Numbered from the stretch's first letter, positions 6,087-62,611 are shown. The stretch is DNA of 64,000 nt from Convolutriloba macropyga (GCF_964194025.1 NC_134472.1:66464001-66528000), one strand, 5' to 3'. Numbers and translations: made by a program. The notes: generated from the sequence alone by a model not told the origin.

Positions 6087-6591
6087 ATGCGTGTAAAAGC
6101 GATATTTTCTGCTTTCGTGGTAGTAATCGTTATTGCCGTTGGCATGAATGTTTCATATTATTCATTCAAGTCCAAATTTGGGTTTACTCCAGTTAAAGAT
6201 GTCCCAAAAGAAAGTATGTGCGGGAAAACAATTCAGCTTCAACCCATTCCAGCATCAAATCCAGACGAAAATAATCAGATGTTTTTTGTAGATGCTTCAC
6301 CGACACCAAAATTTAAAGGCTGGAACTGTTTCCTATGCCCCGGGGAAAATAGGACCATAGTTTGGGACTGGAAAATAATCTACGGTCACATTCTACTAGG
6401 AAATAAACATCCCAAGAATTAAACCCGGAGGAAAAAAACCCTCCTTTTACAGTCAAGTGGAGATTCAATTTTTTGGGCTTTTTCCTACATAAATTTGGGT
6501 GTGTTTTCTTTTCCGTTAGGTCTCCGATGTTATTGAAACTTAAAAATATCACACTTAATCATATATAATCACATATAAATATCACCCTATA

Positions 6592-6664
<73 letters not shown>

Positions 6665-9600
6665 GAATATATAAAAAGTTTGTGATTTTTTTCATTCAGT
6701 TAAGCTGACGAAAATTAACTTTTATTCACAGGGGTAAAAGGAAACAGATCCGAAGGTCGAGTTATGTGTGCGTTTGAGTCAGCTATAGTTCTTGGAAAAC
6801 TTCCCGTGAAAGTTATCGTGATAGCGAAAAATTTTACAATCGATCATCCAGCACTTTGTTCCTTGTTTGATAAGTTCTACCCAGAAAAGCTTAATTTTTA
6901 TTCCGTGGATTTTGACGAACTTTTCAGGGGAACCTCTTTGGAGGGAATTAAGGCTGATAGAAGGCAATCGAAGCCAGTGTTTACTAATATGAGTGATATG
7001 ATGCGAGCAGCGATACTTTATAAGTACGGTGGATTTTATTTCGATCAAGATGTAGTCACTCTCAATGACCTCAGAGGACTCCGTAACATCCTTGTCATGG
7101 ACAACATCCTTACGTAAGATATATCCATTTTGTAACTAAATCTTTTCACTTTATGAGTCTTAAAAGCAAATCAGCGGAAAGACTGCAATGCGAGAACCAT
7201 GCAACATCTGATCAGACACATTCAAACTCTGAACAGTCGTATTCAAACTCTGAACAGTCATATTCAAACTCTGAACAGTCATATTCAAACTCTGAACAGT
7301 CATATTCAAACTCTGAACAGTCATATTCAAACTCTGAACAGTCATATTCAAACTCTGAACAGTCATATTCAAACTCTGAACAGTCATATTCAAACTCTGA
7401 ACAGTCATATTCAAACTCTGAACAGTCATATTCAACCGGAGACCAAACATATATAAACTCTGATCCAGACATGTTCGTCAGACGTGTTGATGATAACTGG
7501 TCTGACAAATCTCAACTCTGACCAGACCCATGACCCTCAACCTTTATCAGACTTGTTCAATCTCTGTGAGACTTTTCATGTGGCAAAAAATCTTGGAATA
7601 ATTTGCGAGACAGTGGACTGATCTAACATAGGGTTAAAGGTCATTGTGCTCAAGGCACAGCGAACAAGTTTCTAGTAAACTAAATTCAGTGATATAAAGT
7701 CATATTCAGTCTCCCTTTAGCCGAGAATTACTGCTTTACACGTTTATTTGGCGGGAACATTCCCAATTTTGACGGGAAAATTTTCAAGTTTTATAATAAT
7801 TCGGGAAGAGTGAACCCATATTATAAATTAAAAAGGTGCAAATGATGTAACAGGCAAACCAGGGGGTAGCTCACAATGCCTAGAACAACTTTCCGAGAAA
7901 AAAAAACAGGCAAATAAAGGCTGAAGAGCAAGGTTTTTACCTTGAAAACTCGTACAGATCAAGTTTTCCAGGCAAATTGTCCAAAGTTTGTCCCAATTCC
8001 ATATCCCGGGTGGTATGAGCATCCACACCGGGTCCTTGACTTTCAACGAATTGCACTGTTTAGGGCAATTCTTTCGATTTGTCATGGTAGGATGATGCTA
8101 CTCCTTAACCAGAGGTTTTCAGATGTGGTTTACAAGCTGCTGTACATCACAACGTGAAGGAAGCTGGATGCTGGCATGTTTGAGGAAAAGTCACCTGTTA
8201 GCAGTGAACTGTAGGGTTTTTGTACCAGAAACTGTTTGGGTTAATTTTTTCTTCATTGTCTGGTACTTCGTTATCTGGTTCATTGTTAGCTACATGCGGA
8301 AGCATGCTTTGTGTTGATACAGAGAGAATAAACGCTGTTTATCATTCTAGGCTCAAGAATGACGCAATTGACGTTTTCTAAATAAGACTGGTAGAGATCA
8401 GAGCCAAATTAACTTCAGAGCCAAAAGGAGTGACAGCAATCCGTCGGCTCTTGTTGTTAATGACGCCGTCTGGAACCTGAATGATATGAGTCCTCGTCAT
8501 GTTTGGCCTCTGGAGCCTTTGTTAGGGGTGTATCCTGGAATAAATTGACCACAATGTGTGGTGAAGGTTAAAATGAAAAACGGTACGTCTGTTCGTCAGG
8601 TTTCCGAACTCGCATGCGTTCTGGCTGATTAAATCCTTCTTCCAATTTTTTCGGAACTGTTTCTTGGGTTACCCGCACTTCGACTATCTCTTCAAACAAC
8701 TTTCAGGTGTGTTTTGGAGCCTTCTCTTCCTGGAGCATGTTGCCATTAAAGTCGCAACATCAAGAAGCGTGAGAAGTTACTGCATTAAAAATTTTACTAA
8801 TAACCTCGAAAAGGTAAATCGGTTGCCCGCAAACATGCATTTTCACTTTATGAGTCTTAAATGTAGTCATCAGAAGATTTTAACAAAAATTTCTGCTGAC
8901 TAACATAAAAATCTGACCAAAATATTTGTTTTGCTTTATATACAGAACAAATAATTGTAATACAAAATATGCGCTAAATGCATAGATTTCATGTTTCTAG
9001 AGAGGTAGTTTCAGTGATTCAATCATGTTTGGTCTCTCTTAGTGGAGATTCACCGCTTTTCACGTTTACTTGGACAATGCCAAGTTTCTGTCTCTGGGAA
9101 GAGTTTCAATTAATTAAAAAAAGGCATCGGTCATCTGCAACTGATTCATCATCAACAGTCATGATAATGATCACCCATTGAAAACAATTTTATCTGTCGA
9201 TACTTAATTTAAAAGTTTTGATGAATGTAAAATTGAAGCTCTTTTTCTTATACTAAACTGCGTGCTTTTGAGTTTGCCGCCTCAGTTTTTTTACAGCAAT
9301 TTTTACAATTTAATGAAGAATGAAAAAACTACGAGAACATCTTTGAAACGATCAGTCAAGATCGATCTAATTAACACAAAATGTAAACCTTGTCGACATA
9401 TGTTTCAAGTATTTGGCATATTTTGACATTCATAGTCTTTGTGACTGAATATAATTCAGTCGATTTTTTTCTTTTGCCTCCGTTTCTGTAGAAATTTCAT
9501 ATCGAACTGAAAACATAATCTGTTGACTGAAAATAGGTATCTCGTAAAGAACTTTATTCACTTTTTTTTCCAATTTTTGACGACTTTACGAGAAAGTGCT

Positions 9601-12600
9601 ACAATTTTTTATCCTGCAAAAAAGTTCTGAAAAGGAAATTCTGGAATAAAAAAATCCCTTCTCTAATTTTTCTTGTATAAAGGAATTGAAATGAAAAGAA
9701 CTGTAGAACACATAAGCAATTATTTAAAATTTAAATTCATTTCAAAGAAAAATAACTGGAACGCGTAATTGTGTCATCTCTAAAAAATTTGGAACAATTC
9801 AATGAATTTGAGAGATTGTCACTTTATATTAAATGAACAACAGACACTGAACATGATTGGCTCACTACAAATCAGATATTTGAACAGTGGTTTTTTTCAA
9901 TTTCTCCATTAGAGCACGCGGAGCTGTATATCGGACAAATAAAACGAAAAACGATAATTTTTGCGTTAATGAGAACCAACGAGAGAAGAACTCGACCAGA
10001 ACAAAATCCCCAAAATAATGCAAGATAACGAGCCGTCTTGCAAAAGCAGATCTTGCACAGCAGTTAGCATTAATCTTGCAAGATCTTGCGAGTCATCCAT
10101 TCGTTTTACAAGATCAGATCCTGCAGGCTGGGCATTAATCTTACAAGACCTTAAAAGATAACCATTTGTTTTTCACCATCAGATCTGCACATTGTACTTT
10201 ATTCCTGCAAGATCTTGCATGAGAACCACTCATCTAGCAAAATCCATTTTACGGTGAGCATTAATCTTGCAAGATCTAGCAAGTTAACTCTTCGGCTTGG
10301 AAAATGATATTTTGCACGCTGAGTATTAATCTTACAGGATCTTGCAAGATCAGATCTTTCATGGCACGTATTAATCTTGCAAGATGGTCTTTCAATGTTA
10401 ACATTTGTCTTGCAAGATCAGATCTTGCGCGGTGGGCATTAATCTTGCGGGACGATCTTTCAATGTGACCGATTATCTATCAAGAGCAGATCTTGAACGG
10501 TGGGCATTTTTTGCGAGATCTTGAAATAGAGTTACCCGTCTCTCAATATCAGATTCTTGACGGTTAGCACTAATGTCGCACGCTCTAGCAAGTGCTAGTT
10601 AACTATTCGAGAATGTTCGTTGGAAAATGATATTTCTCATGCTGGGTTTTAGGCTTATAAGATCTTTTAAGATAATCACCCATCTTCCAAGATCAGATCT
10701 TGCACGGCACACATTAATCTTGCAAGATGATCTTTCATTGTTAACTTGAATTGCAAGATCAGATCTTGCACTGGGGGCGTTAAAGTTGAAAGAAAAAAAT
10801 ACTAGTCTTGCAAGCCAGGCTTTAATTTTTGAAGATATTGGACTGTATACATTGGTCCCATTAACTTTGCAAGATCTTGCAAGATAACCATTGGGCTAGC
10901 AAGATCAGATCATGACCAGTGGGCATTATTTTTGAAAGATATTTATTCGTAATGCAAGATCAGATCTTGCACAGTGGGCATTAACCTTGCAAGCTCTTGC
11001 AAAAATAACCATTTGTCTTGCAAGATCCGATTTTTTTACGGTGGGCATAAACCTTGCAAGATATTGCAAGGTAATTATTCATCATGCAAGATCAGATCTT
11101 GCACGGTAGGCATTAATTTTGCACACCTTGCAAGATAACCATTTGTCTAGCAAGATGATATCTTTCACGGTAGGCATTAACCTTGCATGATCTAGCAAGG
11201 CAACCATTTGGCTCGGAAAAAGGTATTTTGCACGCTGGCAATAATGTTAAAGATCTAGCAAGATAACCATAAGAACACATCTGGTACAGTGGGAATTAAT
11301 CTTGCAAGATATTCATTCTTCTTGCATGATCAGATCTTACACGCTGAGCTTTATTCTCACAAGATCCTACAAGATAATCAACCGTCTTGCAAGATCAGAT
11401 CTTGCACGGTGGGCATTAATCTTGCAAGAGCTTGCAAGATAAGCATTCGTCTTGCAACATCAGATCTTGCATGGTGGGCATTAATTCATTAATTGTGCAA
11501 GATCTAGCATTATTAAAATTATAGCTAGAGTCGTTCCTAATAATCATCGTGCCTTTACTATGTTGACTGCATTTGAATTTGAGATTGACTTTTACAGACG
11601 TATTTCAGGATCCATAAAATAACTTTTTTTCTGTATCCCGAATTAATAAATCACAGCAAGAAAATTACTATCCTCAATGCGCGAAATGACTAATATTCCA
11701 CAGTCATTCCCGGCTATTATGTGGATTTTAACGGCTTGGAATTATACTCATTTCCCATAATTGCACGTCGAGAACGTTCTGATTCCTTAAAAAACGTTCA
11801 TAGCTCCCATTTCTGAAAATTAAAAAAAACTTCGTCAATATTTATTGTCTAAGTTTGGAAAACGGAAAAAAAGCAATTTGACGGTTATTGGCCTTTTACG
11901 GTCATTGACGGTCATTTGACGGTCACCCTTAAACTACAGGTCAAAAATGATCGTTTTAATAAACATTGGGCAAAAATTTGACATGGCTTAAGTTACTGTG
12001 TTATTAAATGTTTCAGGTATCCGAATGAGAAATGCGAGGCGACATCGGTTGAGAAGTCGAACATGTTGAATCAAGGCACCATGCACTTTGAAAAGGGCAA
12101 CAAGTTTCTTGACTCCTATTTGAAAGTTCAAAATCACTCCTGGACAAAGCAATTCCACCCCGTTGGTCTTGGACCTGTTGCAATGCACACGGCAGCATCC
12201 CGGTTTTTCGGCTACGAAGGCAAACTATCTAGCCCAATGACCAGTAAGATATTTTTTCTTTTCCACGAGTCCGCAAATATGTTATTTTCTAAAATTTTGT
12301 TGCAAAAAGTTTTGTTTGTCCCATTAGGATAAAAACATTAATTTTCATTTTATAGAACAGCGTTTCAATTAAACACGTTGTTCGACGATAACTGTTTTCG
12401 TACTTAGCGCACTTAATTGAATCAAAGATTTCAAAATTTTTTCACCGCTTTAGAGAAAATTTAGAAATTTTTTATAAGAGTGTACTTTACACAAACATCA
12501 CCAAATTGCAACGGGCCATTCGTTCCGTTTCACCCATCATTTTCCAAAATGAATCTTAAAACGTACAAATTTGGCTTTAAATGCGAAATATGGTTACAAA

Positions 12601-15600
12601 GTAAATGTTTGAAAAATGCTTCATTTTTTTGTCACCATATGCCACAAAATAAGCCATTTTGTACAACTTCTGTCCACCTAGATCAAGTTCCGTTTTGTAG
12701 GAGCGCCATACTGTAATAAAATATTGGGGAAACCCTCTCCTGAAATGCGGAAGGGCTGCGGTTTTACCCTAATAATTGGTAATTTTCCTATATAAGACAC
12801 CAGAGCATTGCCCAGGCTATCACAGCGTCTCGAAATAATTTAATCATTTCGAAAAATAAAACAAAAGGTATTACTTTGAATTTTTGCGACTTCAAGAAAC
12901 TTTTTTTATCCGATGCAGTTTAACTTCCAATATAAAATTTACAGTTGTGTCGAGGGAACTAATTGATTAGGATAACGGAGAGCTTTTTTAGAAACTTGTT
13001 CATCACCATTTTAGGGGTAAAAGTTTTTGACTAAAAATTTGCTTAGAAAGACGAGTTTTTAGCTGACCTTATACTTTTTCGCATTTATTTTGTCCAATTA
13101 AGCTAAAAGAAATTTTTACCACTCACGAGTTGAATAATGTCATAACTGCTCGAAAAATTGAAATTTTTAATGACAATCTTGGTATTTTGATAATATTTAG
13201 CAAAACGATTTAATTAAGAAAAAAGAGAAAAAAATGGCTTCTGACAGTGACGAAAGTTTTAAAAGAGTTAACATTCCCTCTGTCTACGCAAAAAACACTT
13301 AAGTTAAATTGTCTAAATTTACCAGGAGACCACAACAAGATTGCTGCCTTTTTCAGGGCAACTAGGCAGCGATTTTTAATGGAGAAAAACGCAGATTGTA
13401 ATGTTTTGTAGTGCTGCTTTGATTTGATTAACCCACTAAGATTCATTGTTTGTAGAGTTGATCGAGACTTTTTTGTTTTCTTGAATTAAAAGAAACACTT
13501 GTAGGAAATTTTTTATCGCGGTGGTTACTGATACCGAATATTTGAAGCTTCTCATTTAATAATGGTCACTACTCTAACGACGGAAAACACCGATCAGTTC
13601 TGGATAATTGCTGAAACCGCCCAATTATTTGTTCTACTAACTTGCTGACTACTGAGACCGGGGAGAGGAAAAGGGACTTCTTCTTGGTGACGGTTGCAAC
13701 CGTGGAGAAAGAAAACGGAAATGGTTTTTAAGAGTGACTGAGGAGAAAAATTGACTGTTTTGCGTATTTTTTCTGGGGACTGTTTGATCTTTTACACAAA
13801 ACGTTTAAAAAACAAAAAATCTTGTCTGTTGACGATTTATTTTGTGTGCTTTTTTTATTACTTGATTTGTATTTGTTGAAGACTAGTATCAAGAAAAATA
13901 GATATCGATTTCGGTATTCTCAGGCTTCAAAGAGAGTTTTTTTGATACTCCTCGTTTTCCTAATACGAATGCAATATATCAAGCAAAAAAGTTTTGGGTA
14001 ACTTCAAAACTAACTCAAAAGACTAGCTGAACAGTTTGATTTTCAACACAAGTCGATGTGCTGTCAGAAAAACAAAATTGTTTTCCTAATTTTTATTATT
14101 TCAAACGCGTTCTCTAAAATTTCTCGTTTTTGAGATCCCACCAAGATACATCCAGCAAAATTGCTTTTTGGAAATTCCGCAACTAACTCAGTGGTTTTTT
14201 TATGAGTTGTATTTTTAATTCAAGACTTTTCGCAGTCAGAAAATCAGAACCAATTTCCTGATTTTTCTGATCTTAAAAAAGTGTTTCCAACGTTTCTAGT
14301 TTCTGATATTCCACTATACTATATCAAAATAAACTAGCTTTTTCGCAAAACTAACTGAAAAGGTTAGCTTTAAAGTTTATCGGGTAATTCAATAGGATAT
14401 GCAGTCGGAAAGCTGAAACTTTTCTATTTTTCTTATTTCAAAATTTTTTTTTACACTTTTTGTTTTTCAGATCCCAATATGATATATCGTCTAAATTGGC
14501 TTTCTGGCTACGTTATAACTAACTCGAAAGTGTCATTCACAGGTTTATTTTGTAATTTGATAGGATATGCAGCAAAAAAATCTGAATGGTTTTTGATTTT
14601 TTTATTTCAAAAATTTTTCCTGATAACTCTTGTTCGTAAGATCTCAATATAAAATATCGTCTAAAGCGGGTTTCGAGCTAGTGAGGTGCTAACTTCAAAA
14701 ACCTATCTTAAGCATTTTCCAAGTAATTTAAAAATTTATGCTCTCAGAAAAACAAATTGGGTTCTTTTTATTTTTCTGATTTGTGAACCGTTTTTCTTAC
14801 TTCTGTGTTTTTTTTTGGCTAATTTTTTCAGAGTAAATAAAATGTTTTCATTTGTTTTAAAAAGATAAAAACTAATAACTGTTTATAAATAGAAGTGATA
14901 TCGTAACGTCAAATTATTTGCACGAAAAACTTTAGTTTCTTGAAGATTTTTTTGTCGAAAAAAAAGAATTTTCGATGGACCAAACTGGGGAACAAGACGT
15001 CACAGGAAACCCAACCACGAAAAAATTGTCTTTCATGACGTCTGATACCACTAAATCCGTCTTCTCCTGTTGGGATGACAGAAGACCCGAGAGCGTGATC
15101 AGCTGCAGTTGTACATAATCTTTGACGTCTAAGTGCAACATCAGAAGGTTGCTTGCATGTCGGGTAGTCACCATTAATATCTAACAAAAACATATTTCTA
15201 GCATTGAAATTAAAATTTCTCGTTTTTTTGCTTCCATATTTTATGGACCAGCATCGTGGGACTTAAAGTCAATTTTTTTGCGGTAAACCATCTTTAACTT
15301 CTTTATTTTGCTATCTTGAGTTTGCATTGACAACAAAAACAGCTTAAATTTTTGATAAATTTCCTCATTCTGTAAAGAAATACTCTTTTTTTTTAAATAG
15401 AAAGTCAATATTTTAGCCCCTCTGCTTACAATTACACCCTCGTTCACATTCCGTCTGTTGGCCCACTGGTATAGGATTAAACCACCCCGCATGTTCAACG
15501 TCAATGTAAATGGCTCTTATTTCGACAATTTCATCAGATGCAGCCACTCACTTCACTTGACAGCTCCAGAGTCGAAAAGTGTCAAAATCAGCGGAGACCC

Positions 15601-15673
15601 GAGAAGAGATGTCTACTCCTATTTGGGTCCAAAAGTTTGCCCATTGTCGTTTGCTCATCTTCAGCAGTTCTAA
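6087..15673 (+). CDS. Alpha-1,4-glycosyltransferase (GT32; A4GALT/A4GNT family), 4 exons: 6087-6318, 6756-7113, 12017-12243, 15417-15673 (357 aa)
   Basis: N-terminal type II membrane anchor, then MFFVDAS...RVMCAFESA, SDMMRAAILYKYGGFYFDQDV (DxD motif), LNQGTMHFEKG, GLGP and a C-terminal CP, all typical of this family. Introns 2 (7114-12016) and 3 (12244-15416) are canonical GT-AG with matching phases. Intron 1 is modelled as GC-AG. The joined CDS is 1074 nt and open. Confidence 0.85.
6319..6755 (+). other. Non-canonical (GC-AG) intron bounded by terminal inverted repeats
   Basis: Starts GCTGGAACTGTTTCCTATGCCCC and ends GGGGTAAAAGGAAACAGATCCGAAG. Removing it gives FFVDASPTPKFKGRVMC, the same 17-residue FF-to-C spacing as human A4GALT (FFLETSDRTNPNFLFMC, from memory). 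Confidence 0.7.
6595..6655. repeat. (TA)n microsatellite inside glycosyltransferase intron 1
   Basis: Pure TA run. Confidence 0.95.
7220..7435 (+). repeat. 21-bp minisatellite, about 10.3 near-perfect copies (ATTCAAACTCTGAACAGTCAT)
   Basis: Directly visible tandem array with no spacers, inside glycosyltransferase intron 2. It explains the four overlapping repetitive ORFs in the track. Confidence 0.95.
7850..8632 (+). mobile_element. Degraded BEL/Pao LTR-retrotransposon pol fragment (integrase C-terminal, DUF5641-like)
   Basis: About 8414-8632 translates as FRAKRSDSNPSALVVNDAVWNLNDMSPRHVWPLEPLLGVYPGIN*PQCVVKVKMKNGTSVRQVSELACVL. This matches the BEL C-terminal pattern L.VGD.V......PR..WPLG.V..VYPG.DG.VRVV.VK...G...RPV.KL. 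The upstream part is heavily decayed, so the left boundary is approximate. Confidence 0.6.
10015..11510. repeat. Degenerate satellite (unit roughly 45-65 bp) built from TCTTGCAAGA/AGATCT palindromes
   Basis: Recurrent units like CTTGCAAGATCAGATCTTGCACGGTGGGCATTAATCTTGCAAGATCTTGCAAGATAACC. Related motif clusters occur at about 545-600 and 29050-29130. Confidence 0.85.
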
Positions 15674-15700
15674 CTAGACCTCCTATTTTATAAAAAGTCT

Positions 15701-18050: not shown

Positions 18051-18912
18051 AAGGTCCAACACTAACATCAATTCATTCATGTGTCCCAGTCTAAGTTGGC
18101 CAGACGGAAGGCGCAATTATTTCCAGACCATTGAGTTGGGTCGCTCCGGACCTCCCTGTCCGCAACCCGGTCTGGCCAATGCCTGTCTTGGGACGCGGAC
18201 TTCATCCTGGATGGTAGCTACTTAAAATTGACTTTAATTGCCTTAATTTCATATTGCTCGATTTCATTACGTGAATATGGTGAAAGAGGCTTATAATCAT
18301 TTTCTGAACGAGTCAATGGCTATATCACGAGTCGAAGTGCATCAGAGAAATATTGTAAGATATCCGACGAATAGAGATGAAAATAACTATTTTTCACCGA
18401 AAAGCAACCACATCTTTTAGGGGTACAAGTGGTGAATATTTATGATACTTGCGGTGAATTTAGTCTTTAATTTTAGCAGTAAAATTTTATTAACGTTTTA
18501 TTGGCGGCGATGAACACTAAAAACGGCAATTCTTACATTTTTAATGCAATTTTAAGTGTTGACATCTCAACGCGAGAGGTAAAAAAACACCTGTAATAGA
18601 ACATAATTACTAAGTACTACATATTAATCTTTGAGCTTTTTCTACATAAATTTTATATTATCTAATTTTTGTAATATATATTGTATCTGGAACTGAGAAA
18701 ATTAATTAACCGTTCAACTTCAATTAATAATCTGATATAATATGACCTATCTCTTGTATTCGAAAGCAAGATCATTCTTTTGTTGTCGACAACCAGGCAA
18801 AAATCAGATTAAACACAAAATCACTGAAAATCTTGCATTTGTCTGAGTCCATAAAGTACAACTAAGCTAACGTGATACCCGGTAGGCGTAGAGTGCAGAA
18901 AATGGAACTTAC

Positions 18913-21100: not shown

Positions 21101-21967
21101 ATTTTTTTCTTCGATGTCACATGTAGAACAGAAATTACCAATCACTCAAAAACTAAACCGATTCAACTTTCTTAGAGAAGAGTATGCTGAGCACAGGTCA
21201 TGTGTAAGTCCCAGGGGCCGGTGAGGCATGGCCATGGTCTCTACGTATTATTATTGGTTTGAACTTATCTCGCGCTTGTTTTCTTGCTTTTATAGATAAT
21301 GGAATTTGAAATATCGCTATTAAGTGTATTGGTTCAAAAATTCTATCACTCACTTCAGTAAAAGTGATCAGGTTGCTGCTGAAAACTAACAATTAAAAAT
21401 CATTTTAAAAATGAGAATCGTAAAATTGTCAAAGCGATAAATCACTTCGCTGTCTTATAGTCAAAACTCAGTTCTCCAATTGTTCTCCATTTGATAAAAG
21501 ATCCAAAATTAGCCAGTCAAAACTAAATTTAGGGACCTAAAACATATTCAGGTTTCAAATAAATTATATTAGCGGAGCGTTTTCTATAATGGAGCGATAT
21601 AAAAACTATAGTTTCTATAGGGCAGTTTTATGAGCCCAGGCGAAAAGTTAATACCAAATACCGTCCACGTCATTTTAATCATGTCTTGCATTGATTCAAA
21701 TGAAAACTATCTTTAAAGGCATAAGACCGTTTGTAGAGCAGGATTTCAGATTAAATATGAGGTATTCAGTTAAAATTCTTTTCCTAAAAATGTAGAGCTT
21801 CAATTAATCAGTTTCCAGTTTTATCACTTTTGATTAAACAAATATTTCACCGAAAACACTATATTAATTCAAATGCTTTTCATTGACAATATCGTGCGGT
21901 TAGCAAAAAAGCGGTTTTTAGGTAATATATCAAACGTTTGGATAAAGCGCGATTGAATTATTTTAGT

Positions 21968-24372
21968 ACAAGGAGGCTCGTTAATGTGCGTTCTCAATTG
22001 ATGTTCCGACCCGAGCTCATCTACATTTTTGACCCAATTGTCAACCAATTGAGGAGATAACCAAAAATAGATGTTTGAGTTAAAAAAATTGTTACACAAC
22101 GAAACAACTAATTGAATTAATTAATTTCCATTAAAAAGACAACGAAAAACCAAATGAACAACAAAATAAGCAAAAACAAAAATTTCACGGCAAAAACTCA
22201 AAATCTAAAACTAAAAGCAGTAACAACAACGCATATTGTCCAAAAAACAAAACATCAGTACAAAACATAATATCAATAGAAACATAATAACAATCAATAA
22301 ACAATCTCAATAAACATGTTAATTTTTGATTTACAGGGAATTGGATGGGACCTCTCAATGATGTGAATAAGTTACTTGTTGACGAAAAGAACATAACTGA
22401 AAATCTTCGGAAACGAATATTATCACTAACTTCAAGATCATTCACTAAAAACTGACGGAATTGAGTAAAACCATTCATTCAATCCTCAATTAGAAACTGA
22501 TGAGACATGGCAGCATTTTACGGCTACATAAAGAAAAAAAACAACGAATTTACAAAACATAATAGCGAGAAGTGTCGAAGCCATTAAAAATGAGCTTTTC
22601 AGTAGAAGATTTACAAGCTTTAACCAATCTTTTAACAGCAATAGGATTCTTCTTTTGCAACAATATGACTTCAAAATATCAGAAATATTTACATATATAT
22701 TAGACACGAAATTTTTTAGAAAACCCGTAGTATCAACGCCACTAATTTCAATAACTTTCAACGGAAGTCAAAAATGCGCTAACTTATGCCTGGATGCGAA
22801 GACAAAGATGTTTGTCAATCAAATAGAGTCAGAATGGCATCACAATAAGTCCTATGACTCTGAAAACATCAAAAATACAGGCGAAAAAAAGAAAATCAGA
22901 AGAAAAGTGTAAGAAAGTGTTGAAGCCATTTAAACAATAAGTTTCTACACGAAAACTTTAAATATGATCCAATGAACGTCTTCCCTAAGCCAATTAGAAC
23001 TATCAATGTTACGGTAATGTGATAAGATTTCGAAAGGAACCAGAATCACGAAAAAATTATTCAAAATTTAAAAAAAAACTCGTGGTATTGAAGTAATAAA
23101 ACTAATAGTTAGAAAATAAAACAGCTAACGAGATTAATTATGGTTGCAGTAGAAAACAAGGTGTCCTGTCATTACAGAGACTGGCTTAAAAATCACAAAA
23201 TTAGGTTGAAGATCAGTTATTTTTCAAAAAAATATTCGAAAATTTATTTTTAAAATCTTAACAGCCATTAAGCTCAATAGCTTTCAACGGAAATCATAAA
23301 ATAAGCAAAGCTACGCCTTGATGGGAAATTAAGTATATTTTTCATTCATAAGTCATCAAGAATACATCACAAAAACTCATACGACTATAAAAACAACAAA
23401 TGAAGGCAAAAACAAAAAATTCAGTAAAAAAGTAAGAGAAGAATGTGTCGAAGCCATTTAAACACTAAATTTTTCTCATGAAAATTTATCTAGGATCCAT
23501 TTAACGTCTTCTCAAAAACAATGGAAACTATCACTTTTAGGATAACGTGAAAAGATTTCAAAAGGAACCTAAATAAGGAAAAAAAATATTCAAAAATTTT
23601 TAAAAATATGAAAACTCTTGGCATCAAAGACATAAAACTAACACTAAAAAAAACAATAAACTAGTTTAAGTTTGATTGCATTAGGAAGAAGTGGTTTCTG
23701 TCATTACTGACACTGACTTACAGTTCACGAAAAAAGTTCAAGACCGGTTAATGTTCAAAAAATTATTTTTAAGACTTAACAGCCATTAGTTGTCCACTCA
23801 AAGCACTAGATAGGTTCACTTAAAGCTGAATAGGAAGGCTATTGCACTTTAAGTCAACGATTCTTTGTCACAGTACTACAAAAATTTAGTAAAATCTCAA
23901 AAAGTGACTAACAAAAAATGAAAGTTTTCTAAAAAAACATCTCACAAATTGAATTCGAATTTATTTGATGGTAAACTTCCCTATAAGACCAGAACTAGCC
24001 TTTTCATCGCCTTTCGTCTATTGGCAACACAAAATTGTTTAATTTTGTAGCGTGACATGTAATTTTGAATTAATATTTTTTTTGGAAAAAAAATCTTAAC
24101 TTGAACACAAATTACGCTAAAAGTGAATAAAATCATGGCAAATATCCCGTGTCCACACAAATGTTTACACCTAGATAACTCCTCGAAAACAACGAAATTC
24201 AAAAAAAAACTTCTTTTTAATTCTGCATTCTAGGCTGGACGAGCTTTTTAATGATGCCACTGACATTTCTCTACGATGAATATATCAATCGGCCAAAAAT
24301 TGTCTGAACAAAAAAAACCATTTGAATATATAGTTCCTCCCACCCCCACACAAGTGGGGTCGGAACAAAAAT
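21968..24372 (-). mobile_element. Helentron-like family A, copy 3
   Basis: GGGGTCGGAACA at 24356-24367, internal inverted copy TGTTCCGACCCG at 22002-22013, terminal ACAAGGAGGC at 21968 (reverse complement of GCCTCCTTGT). Confidence 0.6.
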
Positions 24373-25574
24373 AATAGCTGCAAAACGTTCAAGTCTCAAA
24401 CTTCCTTAATTCCTTGCAAAAATTTTGATAGAACCTGACTTAAAGATTGTCATTGCTATTTTTATATAAATTATGCACAATAATAAGGAAAATTAACACA
24501 ATAGTGAACAAATTAGGGCTTTATTTTGACCTTTTGTGGCGTTGACAGCCATAAATCGTTAATTCTAAACAAACTGAAAAAAATTAACCGAAAATTGAGA
24601 AAAAACCCAGAGACAATTCGATTCCTGCTGCTAACAAATTGACACGCAAAAAGGAAATAAAATATTTTAACCCTTATCAGTGAAGGCAGAAGTCTTTTGG
24701 CGTGCCAATTGCTAGTGACGGCTTGTTTCAAATTTTTATTGTAAGTATAATTTTAGTTACTATATCATTCAGAATGAACACTTAATTTATGTGTAGGTCT
24801 TCAAATAGGACCGCTTGTGTTCTCCCAGCGTAATCGACGCTTCCAGATATTCAGAAACAGGCTTTCTTAAGTTGATTGAGATAACACCACAGTTTTTGTG
24901 AATCTTTAAGAACAACAGTTCTTATGAATCACTAAATTGTTTCGGTTTTCTAGAGTAAAAAACTTTCCTCTTTCATCAACAGCCCAAATATTATAGAAAA
25001 ATTTGAATACAATTTGAAAAAAATTTGTATTCGAGACATTATTTATATCTTCATGTGCACAACAAACATTCTTTGGCAGGCATTTGATAAACAGTTTTTA
25101 AAAGCATTTAATGCTAAGAAACGTATTAAAAATCAATCAAATAGTTTTCAAAAATCATCATTAAAAACAAATTACGTCCCATTACTGAGGATCACTTTAT
25201 GTCAATTGATCTGAATTATTAGTTTCCAAACTGTGAAATAATTCAGATAATTAGAATTGAAAGAATCCATACATAATTATATAATTTGCAAATCAAAATT
25301 TGAAAATCTTTACAAATCTTTAAAAATTATTGCTAAACAAATCATCAGTTAATTCAAATTTTTTACTTCTAAGAATGTATATTATTATTTATTAAAACAC
25401 AACCAATAAGTGATAAAATTTCATTAAAAAAATATGCACTATGCAAAATTTTATAAAAGTTTTAGTTTTATTAATAATTTCTTATGGCTCTGCTAGGGTA
25501 TATTGCTGAAAAAATAAAATTTAGGAAAATTAATTGATGAAAACGGATGGTCACAAATAGACGGCATTGACATA

Positions 25575-28500
25575 TTAATTATGTTCACTTTGTTCAATTG
25601 TTAGCGCTTCGCATCCATTTTTAGGTTCACCCCATGGTTGAATTTCACCAGAACCCAGTAACGTATAAAATACTCCACCAAGCACTGAACTGACTCCAAT
25701 AAAGTAGAAACAATGTAACCATAACTCGCTACTGTGAATGTTCTCTTTCGTAAACCCGTCTATAACTAAAGGCATAAACATTGCAACTAAAGCTGCAATT
25801 GTGGCCCCTACAGATTGAATAGTTCCTGCAAAATATGGTGCAATATCGAGACAACTGCAAAATCCACCTGCGTACAAGAAACCAAAGAAAAACGAAGCGG
25901 TTGATATGAGACCAAATGCTAATTTAGACTGGCACTCGGCATATCCGGCTAGTATTAGGAAAACTGCGGTAAAGACCGAACAAATAATTTGATTGATTTT
26001 CCGAATAGCTGTTTTTGGAACACTTTCCTTCTCATGTGATCAATATTATTTTCAAAACAAAACAGTTGCACCCTCTAATGCTGATAACTTTATTAGCTAC
26101 GAAGTACGCCAGTGATATAAAACAGAAACATTTGCAAAAGAATATATAACCTAAGATTACTGCAATGTCCTAATATTCACCAGATTTCAGAGGCTTTGAG
26201 ATTTCAAATTAACTTGAAAGATACCACAAGTCTTTCGCTAGTAAACGTCCATCAAAATTAAAAACAGCCTGAATAAAAATTTTAAATCAAAACAGTATGA
26301 ACGCAAGTCCAGTTTACGAGGGAGGTTTTTCAAATTCATTTGCAGTATTCCTGTTTCGAGGGCTGTTTCGAGCTGAGGGATGTCACGAAAACTTATCCAA
26401 TTCCATTTTATCCAATGCCATTATACCCAACCTGCCATTTTGCCCAATACCAACTTTAATTTACCCTTTTGTCAAAATTACCGGAACGAGAATTTAGCCG
26501 ACTATATATTATGGAACTATCACAACCGAACATGGGATTATATTGCCCACTTAAGTATGCTTAAACAACCTGGTAATAGCGACTGCTCATTTGTAATAAT
26601 TGAATAAAACTATCAGAGCATTGGGTAAAATCGCATTCGCTCAAATAGAATTGTTTAAATTGTCATCTAACCCAGCTGAGGGATTTCAGCAAATCGAGCT
26701 GCATGATTACCTATTCAGTTGAAGGATTTCCGGAGAGATGTAATTTTGCTGAAAAATTCTTTCATTTCTTTTGGGTTGCATGGTTTCATTTTTAGTAAAT
26801 TTGAAAGTTTTTTCCACCAACAACTTCAAGGTATCTAAGCAAAGTTCTTTCGAAAATTTAACAGCAATCTTCACTGAAAAAATTATTTCAATAATCCAAA
26901 ATCATATTCAAGATCCTTTGTAGCCTGAATTCCGAAAAAATAACTTTCCTAATACTGTTGAACTGCGTTAACGCAACACAATTCCAAAATTTGCTAACAA
27001 AATTCCACAATATTAAAATCCACAACAAGTGGCAATAAATGCCTCGGTTTAGTAGCTAATTACACAATTAATTGCACTGAATGGTCGTCAAATTAAACCG
27101 TCGCTAACACTGGTTATTAATAGCCGCAAAGCGATAGCTGAGGCTAATATTGGCCTTCTCCTGGTTTTTTAATTTCGTCGTCAAGATTTTTGTTAAGACC
27201 ATATGACGTCACAAACACTTCAAATCTGCAATTTGTTCATTCGTTCACGCAGTTTTAACTGAATTGCGTGCGTGACGTCATTTTTCACTCTTAGTGGAAC
27301 GAGTTTTTTTGTTCATTTTCGTGAAAGTTTTTGGTGACATCTGGCTTACTTCACTCTCAAAAATGACCTCCACACTCTGAAATTGATTTTTCCTTACTTC
27401 AATTCAAAGAGATAAGGTCAAGTGAGTGTGTGTCACTCTAATTGCAGATCATTTAAGAGCATCTAAAAGAAACAGAAAAACATTATGCAGATTCTTAATC
27501 AAAACATAACATCTCATCCTTTAATGAAAAGAATAATTTATTGGTCTGTCTTTTTTTACTATCTTTTTGAGACTGCAGATCTACGCAACTATCGGGGCTA
27601 TTTTCTGGCAATCTGCCAGCTATGTTTTCAAAATTTTAAGCTGACGGAATTTTCGCCAATCATTTTTTTAAAAGTAGGTCGGTAATTTTGATTAAAGAAA
27701 GGAAGTGCGTTAAGGTCAAAACCGCAATTCAAGCTACGGGCGTTGTAGACTGGATTTCATTATGCTTAGATTTTCTAATTTTGCGAAATTCGGTTACTAA
27801 TTTTCCTAAACAGCCCAGATTTTTAATTTAACCCAATTCTTAAAATTAACCCAATTAACCCAATTTAACCCGTAATTAAGTTACACTCTTAAAATTTGAT
27901 AGGTAAATTTTGACCAATTCAGGTCTGCCTTTGCGGAGTAATGCCTGATTTTCCTACACACAAGGCCAGATTTAAAAACTTGCAAAGTACATGTTCGGAG
28001 TACGGTTGCTTGACTTCTGCTAAAATCACTTCAAAATTCTGAATTAAATCTGAAACAACAACGCGGTTCTCGACGAATGTCCGATTTCCTCAGTGATTTC
28101 ATTAGAGTCACATAAAATACGCAACTTGAAACACTATGAATTAAATTATAAGGTTTTACCATGGGGAAAAGGAAACGGTTCCCTGTAGTTGATATAACTT
28201 TCCGCTCTCGTATTCGGTCAGTGACATAAGCAGGGAATATTGAACCCAACATATTGCAAAACCAGAGAAAAGCGCATAAATAGCCATCTAAGTCGGTGTC
28301 AAAATTCAATACATTCGAGAAATATAAAGGTAATCCTGTCAGCAGAGCGTAATCAACTACATGCAAAGAAATTAGAAGAATTACAAACGCGTGAAATGGA
28401 GGACTTTTTAACATTTCTTTCCAAGGAATATTGGATTGAACTTGGTCCTTTATTTGAGAGGATGCAAGTATGTATTCACGCTCACTTGTCGAAATCCTCG

Positions 28501-29790
28501 GATGACACTCGGGCGAATCTGCCGACGTATAATTCCATACAAAAAACCAAATAACTCCAAAGATTCCATTCATTAGGAACCCTAATGGCCACCCACCCAG
28601 GAAATCAAGAGTACACAGCAATCCTGCGCTCGAGTAGCAGAAAATTAGACCAAACGAGCATCCAGAAAGCGAGAGCCCATAAAATAATGTTCGTTCCATT
28701 TCGGGCGACCACCGGGCTGTTAGGTGACTAAATGCTGGGATAGTTATACCCTCAAACATACCCTCAATAACACGCAAGGTTATTAACCATGGCACCCCCA
28801 AATAGGCAAAAGGGGGGTTCAAAATAGACAAAAAGCTCTTGATTAGAACAGAGTAGCCCATTATGTTTTTGCCTCCATATTTGGACGCAAGATATCCAGC
28901 AGGTAATTGTGTGATAACGTAACCGTAAAAATGGGCAGCAAGAATGTTAGCTTGTTGGGTTGTGGTCCAGTTAAATGTTCCTCCGGTCAAACTGGCCTTT
29001 TGAGAAGGAATCTGTTACAAATTTTCCCTATCCCAATTGGACTATATTATTCTTGCAAGATGTACGCCCGGATCTTGGAAAATAAACGTTATCTTGCAAG
29101 ATAGGCGTTAAACGCAAGATAACTGCTAGATTTCCACTGGGGCCATGCTTTTATAATTAAAACTCTTAAAAATATTAATATAATCTTGTAAGGTTCTACA
29201 GACCTAGATCATGGATGAGCCTAGATCATGGATAGGGCGTTATATTTTATAATTTGAACGTATGAGTTGAAAATCAAGTAAAAACATTCAGCACTTTCAG
29301 CTCATATTTTATGTATGTTTTAGACCTCTCGAAAGCCCCCTTTCTTACCCGAAATGTCGCGCCTTTATAGTGATATTTTCTATAGATTTTAAAATTTGAG
29401 AAAGTCACTTTAAAATTCTGACTTACATCTCTAGCGGCTACAAAGTTTTCGTCGAATTTCTGATTATATCAGTGAACTCATTCGTGTCACGTGACCTATA
29501 CGTGAAAGTTTGTTGGACGTGAAAATCGGAACAGATCCCTGAGAAGTTTCAGACACTGGACAATTTTCGTCGTATGAGCCGTCTTTGGTCCCCTGATCGT
29601 AAACCATCTCCACAATTGCAATACTCATAATCACACGCATCGAAAACAAAGTCCCAAAGCCCAGAAACCCGAGAAGGGCAATTTTTAACCTCGTAGAACA
29701 CAATTTTTCACAGGTTGTCTCATGATAGTTATAATCGTCATTTCGGAGCATTAAGTTGTCCAGTTCAGAAGAATCACCAGCAACAGTCAT
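25575..29790 (-). CDS. SLC17-family MFS anion transporter (sialin/VGLUT-like), 3 exons: 29790-29539, 28996-28183, 26008-25575 (499 aa)
   Basis: Motifs STRLKIALLGFLG...RVIMSIAIVEM, FNW, FYGYVITQLPAGYLASKYGGK, LRVIEGMFEGITIPA...WSPEMER, GGWP, DSPECHPRISTSEREYI, IPWKEMLKS, STTAIRK, LDIAPYFAG and GSGEIQPW. The joined CDS is 1500 nt and open if both introns are read as GG-AG. Confidence 0.88.
26009..28182 (-). other. Non-canonical (GG-AG) intron bounded by terminal inverted repeats, SLC17 intron 2
   Basis: Minus strand: ACAG|GGAACCGTTTCCTTTTCCCCATGG ... CATGAGAAGGAAAGTGTTCCAAAAACAG|CT. Removal gives IRERKVISTTAIRKINQ, collinear with the SLC17/VGLUT motif LRSRRIMSTTNVRKLMN (from memory). Confidence 0.7.
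27114..27635 (+). mobile_element. Helentron-like family B, internally deleted copy (inside SLC17 intron 2)
   Basis: 5' TTATTAATAGCCGCAAAGCGATAGCTG; 3' GGGGCTATTTTT + hairpin CTGGCAATCTGCCAG (27605-27619). Matches the reverse complement of both ends of 60211-61143. Confidence 0.65.
28997..29538 (-). other. Non-canonical (GG-AG) intron bounded by terminal inverted repeats, SLC17 intron 1
   Basis: Minus strand: TCTCAG|GGATCTGTTCCGATTTTCACGTCCAA ... TTGGGATAGGGAAAATTTGTAACAGATTCCTTCTCAAAAG|GCC. The phase-0 join gives CPVSETSQ|ASLTGGTFNW. It lies in a variable loop, so the boundaries rest on the shared motif rather than on protein homology. Confidence 0.55.
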
Positions 29791-60210: not shown

Positions 60211-61143
60211 AAATTTGAGAACATAGCTGGCAGATTGCGAGAAAATAGCCGCAATAGATTCGTAGATCGGCAGTCTCAGAAAAAACAGTAAAAAACACAG
60301 ACCAAAAAAATTTGTCTTTAAGGCTGATCTGTTATATTTTGATTAAAAATCTGTATAAGTTATTGCTGCCTCTATTAGCTGATCTCAAATAACCTTCATT
60401 TAGAGTAACACACACCCATTTGACCTTATCTCTTTGAATTAAAATAAATAAAAGTCAATTTCAAAGTGAGGAAGTCATTTTTGAGAGTGAGGTAAGTCAA
60501 GTGTGACCGAAAATTTAATCACGCGAATGAGCAAAAAAAAAACTCGCTCCACTAAGAGCGAAAAATAACGTCACGCATGCAATTCAGTTGAAATTACATG
60601 AACGAATGAACAAAAAGTGGCCGTGACGTCATATGGTCGTAACAAAAATCATGACGACGAAATAAAAAACATAGCAGGACAAGTCCTGACGTACAATTCA
60701 AAGAATTTTCATTGACTAAACAGAAAATTAGACCTAGAACGGACAATGAATGGATTGGGAAAACAATTTAGAAAAAAAATCCAATCCAAAAACTCGAAAA
60801 AACAGTAAAAATCAAAATGAAATTGCCGCATGTGAACAAAAAACCACTAGCGAGAAAGCGAATTTTTGTTCAAACACTGTTTTCTCACTCTACTTTAGAT
60901 TTAGAGCGAAAAAATTCACGCCGCAAAATCACTCGTTTTTTCGCTCCACTTCCTGTTTCGGCGTGACCAAAATCACTACTCCAATTTGACTTCAAAAATC
61001 ATGAAAATGTGTTAACAGATCTTAAAAAAAAGACAGCACCCCAATATAATTCAAATTCTTTGAATTGCAAAAATTCTTTGAATTGTAAAAAACCAAGAGA
61101 AGGCCAATAATAGCCCCAGCTATCGCTGTGCGGCTATTAATAA
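60211..61143 (-). mobile_element. Helentron-like family B, longest copy
   Basis: On +, the ends are ACATAGCTGGCAGATTGCGAGAAAATAGCCGC and GCTATCGCTGTGCGGCTATTAATAA, matching the ends of 27114-27635 in reverse complement. Confidence 0.65.
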
Positions 61144-62567: not shown

Positions 62568-62611
62568 AACTTCTGCAATTATAGAATAATTAGTAAATAT
62601 GCAAACTGATT

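What the first reader, a model, noticed from the sequence alone, without database searches (positions are those of the whole stretch)
6319..29538. Candidate class of non-GT introns defined by a shared terminal inverted repeat (3 of 5 introns in the window)
SEEN: three introns in two unrelated, otherwise intact genes share related ends. A (6319-6755, +): GCT-GGAACTGTTTCCTATGCCCC...GGGGTAAAAGGAAACAGATCC-GAAG. B (29538-28997, -): GGATCTGTTCCGATTTTC...GAAAATTTGTAACAGATTCC-TTCTCAAAAG. C (28182-26009, -): GGAACCGTTTCCTTTTC...GAGAAGGAAAGTGTTCC-AAAAACAG. In each, the 5' end can base-pair with a segment ending 4-10 nt before the intron's 3' end, and the upstream exon ends in AG. Sliding the junction across the short direct repeat never yields GT-AG. 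The interiors (437, 542 and 2174 nt) look unrelated, and the two canonical introns lack the motif. KNOWN: intron-generating TIR transposons (Introners) and non-canonical introns occur in the larvacean Fritillaria and in Amoebophrya, and euglenid nonconventional introns have base-paired ends. GG-AG introns are otherwise very rare in animals. INFERENCE: these derive from one TIR transposon family, and the ends may be kept because a terminal stem positions the splice sites. That would imply a relaxed or modified 5' splice-site recognition system in this organism.
Basis: partly seen in the sequence, partly recalled or inferred. Interest (0 to 1): 0.92.

Follow-up and report, generated by a model that had tools for sequence, protein, structure and literature searches.

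The report
Transposon-derived non-GT introns in an acoel
Three inserts that interrupt two otherwise intact genes of the acoel worm Convolutriloba macropyga are copies of one small DNA transposon family, and RNA data show they are cut out of the messenger exactly even though none begins with the usual GT, which has been described in very few animals.

Summary
The core observation holds and now has RNA support. The window is Convolutriloba macropyga (acoel). One public run (X4) behaves as RNA. A single contig skips insert A (437 nt) and also the 4.9-kb GT-AG intron of the same gene. Another contig skips B (539 nt) and C (2174 nt). DNA runs and a second haplotype assembly keep all three inserts.

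B is removed as 539 nt, not 542. The expressed allele most likely splices ...CTTCTCGG|AAGGCC.

GT dinucleotides inside the inverted repeats offer in-frame GT-AG alternatives. The assembled transcripts do not use them.

The inserts have about 20-nt terminal inverted repeats (GGAWCYGTTTCCTTTT.CCC) and 7-8-bp target duplications that end in or contain AG. B and C also share about 180 nt of subterminal homology. Four sialin-like paralogues are intronless. Two glycosyltransferase paralogues lack intron A but share the canonical intron positions.

Best reading: recent transposon insertions spliced as G[C/G]..AG introns, with the duplicated target supplying the AG. This is the same kind of thing as in Fritillaria, Amoebophrya and introners, but new for acoels. 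A role for the stem is untested. The scan had flagged this class on other DNA of this genome (s1-250063), without RNA evidence.

The parts
6087..15673 (+). Gene A: alpha-1,4-glycosyltransferase-like (A4GALT family), 357 aa, 4 exons (6087-6318, 6756-7113, 12017-12243, 15417-15673)
   Evidence: The spliced ORF is intact. Pfam Gly_transf_sug hits exon 2. C. macropyga paralogues P0034, P0035, P0037 and P0039 match it. RNA contig X4 record 10 joins exons 1-2-3.
6319..6755 (+). Intron A, 437 nt, non-GT. The register is ambiguous over 4 nt (start 6316-6320); GC..AG is the only register ending in AG.
   Evidence: X4 shows joint 6315->6753 at depth 159.5, with no such joint in the DNA-like runs X3, X5 and X8. 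Registers are listed. Paralogues P0035 and P0034 are continuous across this site.
6321..6341 (+). A, 5' TIR arm (GGAACTGTTTCCTATGCCCC)
6731..6752 (+). A, 3' TIR arm (GGGGTAAAAGGAAACAGATCC). It contains the AGs at 6730-31 and 6746-47, which are skipped.
7114..12016 (+). Canonical GT-AG intron 2 of gene A (GTAAGA...TTTCAG). It is skipped in the same RNA contig as A, and its position is shared with paralogue P0035.
   Evidence: The duplex energy of its ends is ordinary at -7.0.
8650..8675 (+). Solo TIR-like copy (TTCGGAACTGTTTCTTGGGTTACCC) inside canonical intron 2. No partner arm was found within 8 kb.
12244..15416 (+). Canonical GT-AG intron 3 of gene A (GTAAGA...TTTTAG). Its position is shared with paralogue P0035.
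   Evidence: homology only; no RNA was laid here
25575..29790 (-). Gene BC: sialin-like SLC17/MFS transporter, 500 aa, 3 exons (29790-29539, 28999-28183, 26008-25575)
   Evidence: The spliced ORF is intact. Pfam MFS_1 hits it. Its paralogues are named sialin-like [Convolutriloba macropyga]. RNA contig X4 record 25 joins the three exons.
29000..29538 (-). Intron B, 539 nt (element 29538-29008 plus the 3' target-duplication copy 29007-29000). Pieces were laid as ...29001 | 29541.... The 5' end is GG. The 3' end is AA in the window allele and AG in the L009 allele.
   Evidence: The register was inferred from piece ends, mismatch counts and a simulation.
29521..29540 (-). B, 5' TIR arm (GGGATCTGTTCCGATTTTC)
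29006..29026 (-). B, 3' TIR arm (GAAAATTTGTAACAGATTCC)
29539..29546 (-). B, 5' copy of the 8-bp target duplication (CTTCTCAG; CTTCTCGG in L009 and X3). The 3' copy at 29000-29007 is CTTCTCAA (CTTCTCAG in L009).
26009..28182 (-). Intron C, 2174 nt (element 28182-26017 plus the 3' duplication copy AAAAACAG at 26016-26009). GG..AG is the only AG-ending register.
   Evidence: X4 pieces end at 26008 | 28183. The junction VISTT|AIRK matches the intronless paralogues. Nested high-copy repeats lie at 26264-26686 and 27110-27673.
28158..28182 (-). C, 5' TIR arm (GGAACCGTTTCCTTTTCCCC)
26017..26040 (-). C, 3' TIR arm (GAGAAGGAAAGTGTTCC)
28183..28190 (-). C, 5' copy of the 8-bp target duplication (AACTACAG, against AAAAACAG at 26009-26016)
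28022..28111 (-). Subterminal region of C that is homologous to B 29401-29490. The alignment extends to about 180 nt from the 5' ends.

Best explanation
A, B and C are non-autonomous copies of one cut-and-paste DNA transposon family. The family has about 20-nt terminal inverted repeats (GGAWCYGTTTCCTTTT.CCC) and a 7-8-bp target duplication. The copies inserted into coding exons of two C. macropyga genes.

Shown: the inserts are still in the DNA of every sample and of both haplotypes. They are removed from the RNA exactly as 'element plus one copy of the target duplication', which restores the pre-insertion reading frame. None of the possible junction registers is GT-AG. The GTs inside the repeats are not used in the assembled transcripts.

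Inferred: removal is by the ordinary U2-type spliceosome, which in this animal tolerates C or G at intron position +2. The duplicated target ends in or contains AG. Its upstream copy therefore gives an exon end ...AG|G and its downstream copy gives the 3' splice site ...AG|. The first G of the element, or of the duplication in A, serves as +1.

Also inferred: the paired repeat arms bring the two sites together and bury the internal GT and AG dinucleotides. That would explain why the first accessible AG beyond the stem is chosen. This helper role of the stem is plausible but untested.
For: RNA evidence:
- X4 record 10 joins 6132-6315 | 6753-7113 | 12017-12091. It skips A and the GT..AG intron in one contig at depth 159.5, with zero depth inside both.
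- X4 record 25 joins 25700-26008 | 28183-29001 | 29541-29900.

DNA evidence:
- Contigs of X1, X2, X3, X5 and X8 cross the insert borders at flat depth and show no empty-site joint for A.
- The second haplotype L009 carries B and C at 93-96% identity.

Transposon signature:
- Motif enrichment.
- TIR alignment.
- Target duplications CTTCTCAG and AACTACAG/AAAAACAG.
- B/C subterminal homology.
- No transposase ORF in C.

Recent gain:
- Paralogues P0001, P0002, P0004 and P0008 are single-exon genes.
- P0035 and P0034 are continuous at site A but share intron 2, and P0035 also shares intron 3.

Registers and stems:
- AG-ending registers exist for A (GC..AG), for C (GG..AG) and for B in the L009-type allele (GG..AG).
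- In-frame GT..AG alternatives that start in the TIR exist for all three and are not the assembled form.
- Stem energies and folds.

Precedent: the U2 spliceosome removes TIR/TSD-bearing non-canonical introns in Fritillaria (PMC11282704, PMC13326754).
Against: - Only one RNA data set was available, and only as assembled contigs. Minor isoforms and the actual letters at the joints were not visible.
- The register of B rests on piece ends, mismatch bookkeeping and a simulated alignment.
- If the expressed allele carries AA like the window and X3, then B ends in AA, not AG.
- There is no lariat, branch-point or inhibitor evidence, so the spliceosome is assumed rather than shown.
- Between haplotypes the arms are no better conserved than the interior, so selection on the stem is not shown.
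- The family looks low-copy. The motif is absent from about 95 kb elsewhere, and the interiors of A and B are single-copy by depth.
Confidence: 0.75

Rival explanations
1. The inserts are removed by a structure-guided pathway that is not the standard spliceosome, as proposed for euglenid nonconventional introns. The terminal hairpin defines the cuts, and the end dinucleotides are irrelevant.
For: - Strong terminal stems are present in all three inserts.
- What is removed is always the element plus one duplication copy.
- In the window and X3 alleles, B has no AG at the end of the duplication.
- Registers that place both cuts 3-4 nt outside the stem exist for all three.
- Euglenid introns have paired ends and TSD-like repeats (PMC11282704).
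Against: - AG-ending registers with an ...AG|G exon end exist for A, for C and for the L009-type allele of B. Chance would not readily give this three times.
- Ordinary GT-AG introns are spliced in the same transcript.
- The euglenid pairing positions (+4..+6 with -8..-6) and the pyrimidine|purine borders are not met for A and C.
Confidence: 0.15
2. The mRNA comes from alleles that lack the insertions (polymorphic transposons, empty sites in DNA). No unusual splicing would then be needed.
For: Removal of the element plus one duplication copy is exactly what an empty site looks like. The genome is highly heterozygous at 3.65% (PMC13650328).
Against: - Two assemblies, representing diverged haplotypes, and the contigs of five DNA-like runs from at least three samples all carry the inserts.
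- SNP-bearing contigs also span the borders of A.
- No empty-site joint for A appears in X3, X5 or X8.
- X4 itself holds unique pieces of B and C at low depth, as pre-mRNA would.
- Three independent sites would all have to be empty in the RNA donor.
Confidence: 0.04
3. The junctions are artefacts: reverse-transcriptase template switching across a hairpin between short direct repeats, or mis-assembly.
For: Direct repeats of 4-8 nt and stable stems at non-canonical junctions are the classic signature of such artefacts (discussed in PMC7072748).
Against: - The joined form is the only assembled form of A (depth 159.5 against 0 inside) and the dominant form for B and C.
- The jump would span up to 2.2 kb.
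- A k=31 assembly cannot jump across repeats of 8 nt or less.
- All three removals restore conserved ORFs that would otherwise be broken, because each insert length is 2 mod 3.
Confidence: 0.03
4. Ordinary GT-AG splicing uses the GT inside the 5' repeat (GGAACT|GTTTCC and the like). This would leave a few extra codons in the mRNA.
For: In-frame GT..AG alternatives exist for all three: A 6328-6755 (+9 nt), B 29532-28997 (+3 nt) and C 28176-26009 (+6 nt).
Against: The RNA contigs show skips of exactly 437, 539 and 2174 nt. The paralogue alignments fit without extra residues.
Confidence: 0.02

Closest known systems
Non-canonical, MITE-derived introns of the larvacean Fritillaria borealis (Henriet et al. 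2019; PMC13326754; review PMC11282704)
   Same: - It is an animal.
- The introns carry TIRs and target duplications.
- Non-canonical introns sit at lineage-specific positions, while GT-AG introns sit at conserved ones.
- Part of a splice site comes from the duplicated target.
- Canonical and non-canonical introns occur in the same genes.
   Different: - Fritillaria ends are mostly AG-AC or AG-AT, preceded by exonic TAC. Here they are G[C/G]..AG after exonic AG.
- The transposon family is different and the target duplication is longer (7-8 bp).
- Prevalence in the acoel is unknown.
- Use of the U2 spliceosome and divergent U2AF paralogues are shown there and untested here.
Introner elements of Amoebophrya (PMC7789003)
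   Same: Both have 8-20-nt inverted repeats at the two intron ends that form a hairpin, direct repeats overlapping the exon/intron borders, no transposase inside, and splice position variable relative to the hairpin.
   Different: It is a dinoflagellate. Its direct repeats are 3-5 nt. Its ends are very diverse, and U1 snRNA was not found. Here the repeats are 7-8 nt and AG-ending registers exist.
Introners of Micromonas, Aureococcus and free-living dinoflagellates (PMC11282704; Gozashti et al. 2022)
   Same: A DNA transposon supplies one splice site and the target duplication supplies the other (3' AG). GC-AG is frequent in the dinoflagellate families.
   Different: Those families have hundreds to thousands of near-identical copies and mostly GT/GC-AG ends. 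Here the family looks low-copy, and two of three copies start with GG.
Nonconventional introns of euglenids (PMC11282704, PMC12501133)
   Same: Paired intron ends bring the borders together, TSD-like repeats sit at the junctions, lengths are very variable, and they coexist with conventional introns.
   Different: The euglenid pairing register (+4..+6 with -8..-6), the pyrimidine|purine borders and the circular excised form are not seen or not testable here. Euglenids are protists.
G*-AG introns of Oikopleura dioica and Eurytemora affinis (PMC7072748)
   Same: These are animals that splice many introns with a non-T at position +2, after a conserved exonic AG.
   Different: Those are mainly GA-AG with a downstream A. 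The cited paper does not describe terminal inverted repeats or a transposon origin for them.

Membership tests
Transposon-derived non-canonical introns (Fritillaria type) | Junctions without GT-AG, supported by transcripts | tested here: met
   RNA contigs skip 437, 539 and 2174 nt, and no register is GT-AG.
Transposon-derived non-canonical introns (Fritillaria type) | Terminal inverted repeats plus target-site duplication at the borders | tested here: met
   TIRs are about 20 nt. The TSDs are CTTCTCAG, AACTACAG/AAAAACAG and AAAGGCT/GAAGGTC.
Transposon-derived non-canonical introns (Fritillaria type) | Non-canonical introns at lineage-specific positions, canonical ones at conserved positions | tested here: met
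   The test was within-genome paralogues only. Four sialin-like paralogues are intronless. P0035 lacks A but shares introns 2 and 3.
Transposon-derived non-canonical introns (Fritillaria type) | AG-AC / AG-AT ends preceded by exonic TAC | tested here: not met
   AG-AC is one possible register of C only. None follows TAC, and A and B cannot be AG-AC or AG-AT.
Transposon-derived non-canonical introns (Fritillaria type) | Removal by the U2-type spliceosome | not testable with these tools
   No lariat, branch-point or inhibitor data were available.
Introner elements (Micromonas / dinoflagellate sense) | Many near-identical intronic copies genome-wide | tested here: inconclusive
   There are three copies plus one solo end within 23 kb. 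None is found in about 95 kb of other loci. The interiors of A and B are single-copy by depth. The genome itself could not be scanned.
Introner elements (Micromonas / dinoflagellate sense) | One splice site carried by the element, the other co-opted from the target duplication | tested here: met
   The AG of the downstream duplication copy is the 3' end in the AG registers of A, C and B (L009 allele).
Amoebophrya-type introners | 8-20-nt inverted repeats at both intron ends with direct repeats overlapping the borders | tested here: met
   The direct repeats here are longer (7-8 nt against 3-5 nt).
Euglenid nonconventional introns | Pairing of +4..+6 with -8..-6 and pyrimidine|purine borders | tested here: not met
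   The stems start at +1 to +4 and end at -4 to -9. No Y|R register exists for A.
Euglenid nonconventional introns | Excised as a full-length circle, no lariat | not testable with these tools
   Read-level RNA data were not available.
U12-type (minor) introns | 5' consensus RTATCCTT and a matching branch site | tested here: not met
   The 5' ends are GCTGGAAC, GGATCTGT and GGAACCGT.
Standard GC-AG U2 introns | GC at +1,+2 compensated by a strong consensus (AG|GCAAGT) | tested here: not met
   A has AAG|GCTGGA. B and C start with GG.
hAT / P / Merlin-type DNA transposons (8-bp duplication) | Cognate transposase with matching TIRs | not testable with these tools
   C has no transposase ORF and the genome could not be searched. 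Only the 7-8-bp duplication length fits.

The most novel reading that the evidence does not exclude
Acoels may have evolved their own way of neutralising DNA-transposon insertions in exons. Any insert closed by a terminal hairpin would be excised from RNA at the stem base, irrespective of GT (and possibly of AG, as in the AA allele of B). This could be done by a modified spliceosome or by a separate machinery, and such hairpin-closed introns could make up a sizeable share of the genes of C. macropyga. That would be a second, independent animal case after Fritillaria, in a lineage central to debates on early bilaterian genomes. It would also explain the poor automatic annotation of acoel genomes.
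Probability: 0.3. Interest if true: 0.9.

Novelty: new variant of a known kind. Interest (0 to 1): 0.78.

Why it matters
Why almost all introns start with GT, and how new introns arise, are old open questions. Organisms that break the rule are rare, and in animals they are so far essentially tunicates and one copepod.

Here an acoel shows, with transcript support, recent transposon insertions in coding exons that behave as precise non-GT introns. Alongside them sit old GT-AG introns in the same gene, allelic variation at a splice site (CAG against CAA at the end of B), and intronless paralogues as controls. This makes the origin of introns from transposons and the tolerance of the 5' splice site directly testable in a culturable animal.

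There is also a practical consequence. Neither gene has a full-length protein in the searched collection. The ENA model of gene BC stops at both inserts (P0003). Standard annotation of this genome, and probably of other acoel genomes, is therefore likely to truncate many genes.

Tried and rejected
- **GT donors inside the repeats.** In-frame options exist but the contigs contradict them.
- **Empty-allele and somatic DNA-excision readings.** All DNA runs and both assemblies keep the inserts.
- **RT or assembly artefact.** Rejected on dominance of the joined form, the distance spanned and ORF restoration.
Not what was laid.
- **'No AG at all' for B.** I first read B this way from the window letters. 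I revised it after finding the second haplotype and simulating the alignment. Only ...CTCGG|AAGG reproduces the pieces 29001|29541 and the mismatch counts. This remains an inference.
- **ADAR editing of AA to AI at B.** Does not fit the inferred mRNA letters.
- **U12 type.** No consensus.
- **Rfam scan of the window.** No hit, so no snRNA here.
- **Transposase inside C.** None found.
- **Partner arm for the solo TIR at 8653 and for the weak motif at 63739.** None found.
- **Compensatory changes between haplotypes.** At one stem position of B both arms differ (C.U in the window, U.G in L009). This is not convincing, and the arms are not specially conserved.
- **Truncated paralogue P0011 (L007).** Only the N-terminal half is present, beside a Pao retroelement. 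It is not another example.
- **Literature search.** I searched for non-canonical introns or introners in acoels and found nothing relevant.
- **Tool caps.** A second RNA run could not be found.

Full report
**Organism and genes**

The window is from the acoel Convolutriloba macropyga. An earlier scan note said so. I confirmed it because the closest database proteins are NCBI entries named for this species and lie on assembly GCA_964194025.3.

Gene A (6087-15673, + strand) encodes a 357-aa A4GALT-like glycosyltransferase. Gene BC (29790-25575, - strand) encodes a 500-aa sialin-like SLC17 transporter. Both ORFs are intact once the inserts are removed.

**The observation**

- The shared motif is far above chance: 6 hits against 1.0 expected, and none of 100 shuffles reaches 6.
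- Four of the five exact 11-mers in the window lie at ends of the three inserts.
- There is no copy in about 95 kb of other loci from this genome.
- The two ends of each insert pair strongly: -30.7, -21.3 and -22.4 kcal/mol, against -7.5 +/- 3.3 for 5000 random end pairs and -7.0 for the canonical intron 2.
- The terminal stems survive in whole-insert MFE and centroid folds.
- Sliding each junction over its direct repeat never gives GT-AG.

**RNA evidence**

Run X4 (2016, 159 Mb of contigs) was labelled 'DNA?' but behaves as RNA. Its contig 10 (depth 159.5) lies on 6132-6315 | 6753-7113 | 12017-12091. One molecule therefore lacks both the 437-nt insert A and the 4903-nt GT..AG intron, and depth inside both is zero.

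Its contig 25 (1828 nt, depth 17.2) lies on 25700-26008 | 28183-29001 | 29541-29900. It lacks C (2174 nt) and B (539 nt). Unique pieces of B and C are present at depth 1.5-7.5, as unspliced precursor would be.

Runs X1, X2, X3, X5 and X8 have flat depth and contigs that cross the insert borders. None shows the A joint. These are contigs, not reads, so minor isoforms and the letters at the joints were not visible.

**Junctions**

A: the joint is 6315->6753 with 4 ambiguous letters. The registers are AA..CG, AG..GA, GG..AA, GC..AG and CT..GG.

C: the joint is 26008|28183 with ACAG ambiguous. GG..AG is the only AG-ending register. The protein junction VISTT|AIRK matches the paralogues without extra residues.

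With the window's own letters, no register ends in AG.

A second assembly of the same locus (L009, ENA ERZ25071359) is 93-96% identical within the inserts and carries both B and C. It shows that the flanks of B are allelic.
- The 5' copy is CTTCTCAG in the window and CTTCTCGG in L009 and X3.
- The 3' copy is CTTCTCAA in the window and X3, and CTTCTCAG in L009.
- The ancestral target duplication was therefore the 8-mer CTTCTCAG.

The X4 transcript carries L009-type SNPs in all three exons. I simulated the three possible mRNAs against the window. Only ...CTTCTCGG|AAGGCC... gives local alignments that end at 29541 and, after the leftmost-overlap rule seen for A and C, at 29001. That version also accounts for two unlisted mismatches next to the joint. 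Only two table rows were hidden, and they are best assigned to 29846 and 25952.

B is thus most likely 'element plus downstream duplication copy', starting with GG. It ends in AG if the expressed allele is L009-like at 29000, and in AA if it is window-like. This step is inference, not a read-out.

**Transposon origin**

- The six arms and a solo copy at 8650-8675, inside the canonical intron 2, align to GGAWCYGTTTCCTTTT.CCC.
- The duplications are 8 bp for B and C and 7-8 bp (degenerate, core AAGG) for A.
- B and C share about 180 nt of 5' subterminal sequence at 75% column identity, with a BLAST core of 90 nt at E=2e-11. The statement that the interiors are unrelated therefore needs correcting.
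- C holds nested high-copy repeats and no transposase ORF.
- The superfamily is unresolved. A 7-8-bp duplication fits hAT, P or Merlin types, from general knowledge.
- Three copies plus a solo end within 23 kb, and none in about 95 kb elsewhere, would fit local hopping. That is speculation.

**Age and gain**

The four closest sialin-like paralogues (P0001, P0002, P0004, P0008) are single-exon genes. B and C therefore interrupted a continuous ORF.

Glycosyltransferase paralogues P0035 and P0034 run straight through site A. P0035 has introns at the same places as the two GTAAGA...AG introns of gene A. New introns are non-GT and transposon-borne, while old introns are canonical. This is the Fritillaria pattern (PMC11282704).

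The insertions predate the split of the two haplotypes. Exons differ by about 1% and inserts by 4-7%.

**Mechanism**

Shown: the inserts are removed at the RNA level, precisely, at non-GT sites.

Inferred: the U2 spliceosome does this with relaxed +2 recognition. In the AG registers, all three have an exon end ...AG|G (CGG|G in the L009-type allele of B) and a 3' end ...AG| supplied by the duplication. Internal GT and AG dinucleotides lie within the paired arms and are skipped. In-frame GT..AG alternatives exist but are not the assembled form. A has a CTGAC branch-like motif about 45 nt upstream of its 3' end.

The stem may bring the sites together and mask cryptic sites. However, the arms are not better conserved than the interiors between haplotypes, and I found no clean compensatory change.

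A non-spliceosomal, structure-guided pathway as in euglenids is the main rival. The AA allele of B is the observation that best keeps it alive.

**Comparison and novelty**

Introns with TIR/TSD borders and non-canonical ends are known from:
- Fritillaria borealis (AG-AC/AG-AT, U2 spliceosome, divergent U2AF; PMC13326754);
- Amoebophrya (8-20-nt inverted repeats, 3-5-nt direct repeats, hairpin; PMC7789003);
- dinoflagellate and algal introners;
- euglenids (PMC11282704).

G*-AG introns are common in Oikopleura and Eurytemora (PMC7072748).

I found no description of anything similar in acoels. The C. macropyga genome note does not mention introns or splicing. The S. roscoffensis genome paper reports only an average intron count and length and SL trans-splicing, with no mention of non-canonical splice sites. 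No acoel paper in the library describes introners or non-canonical introns; the one paper holding both 'introner' and 'acoel' is about Copia retrotransposons.

The scan itself has noted many hairpin-closed GA/GC/GG-AG introns elsewhere in this genome. One follow-up (s1-250063) reached the same reading without RNA. Those notes are leads, not evidence. This report adds transcript support, the transposon anatomy, the allelic splice-site variant and the paralogue controls.

**Side effect on annotation**

Neither gene has a full-length protein in the searched collection; the best hits were 58-60% identical paralogues. The ENA model of gene BC (P0003) starts inside B and reads into C.

Noticed in passing
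window 29000 and 29540; L009 4016 and 3489: The two copies of B's target duplication are allelic. At 29540 the alleles are CTTCTCAG (window) and CTTCTCGG. At 29000 they are CTTCTCAA (window) and CTTCTCAG. At least three combinations occur: window, L009 and X3. This is a natural experiment on whether the 3' AG is needed.
   Followed up: partly
window 28167 (run X4, loose ends): One X4 contig shares the end of exon 2 plus the outer 16 nt of C's 5' arm, then continues into unrelated sequence. Depth in that bin is about 3 times that of the exon. It could be a structural allele, a paralogue or another transcript form.
   Followed up: no
window 27110-27673 and 26264-26686: Very high-copy repeats are nested inside insert C, with word depth up to 10^5 in the DNA runs. 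Related copies lie at 60211-60686, 61086-61143, 62610-62995 and 63367-63419.
   Followed up: partly
window 10067-11485; also 29045-29125 inside B: Arrays of a roughly 65-nt unit built from the palindrome TCTTGCAAGA fill part of canonical intron 2. Fragments of the same palindrome lie inside B.
   Followed up: no
window 7207-7435: A 21-nt tandem repeat (TCTGAACAGTCATATTCAAAC, 10.9 copies, 97% matches) lies in intron 2 of gene A. It produces long spurious ORFs in three frames.
   Followed up: no
window 6595-6673: An (AT)n microsatellite of about 40 units lies inside insert A. Contigs of all runs break there.
   Followed up: no
L009 4001-4972 (protein P0003): The public gene model for gene BC covers only the middle exon. 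It starts inside B and reads on into C. No full-length protein for either window gene is in the searched collection.
   Followed up: partly
L007 8001-8888 and 10685-16036: A sialin-like paralogue has only its N-terminal half (P0011). It lies next to a 1783-aa Pao/BEL-type retrotransposon ORF and is probably a disrupted gene.
   Followed up: partly
L006 5134-5274 and 24370-24510: The multi-exon sialin-like gene P0010 spans 55 kb. Its first coding exon is present twice, about 19 kb apart.
   Followed up: no
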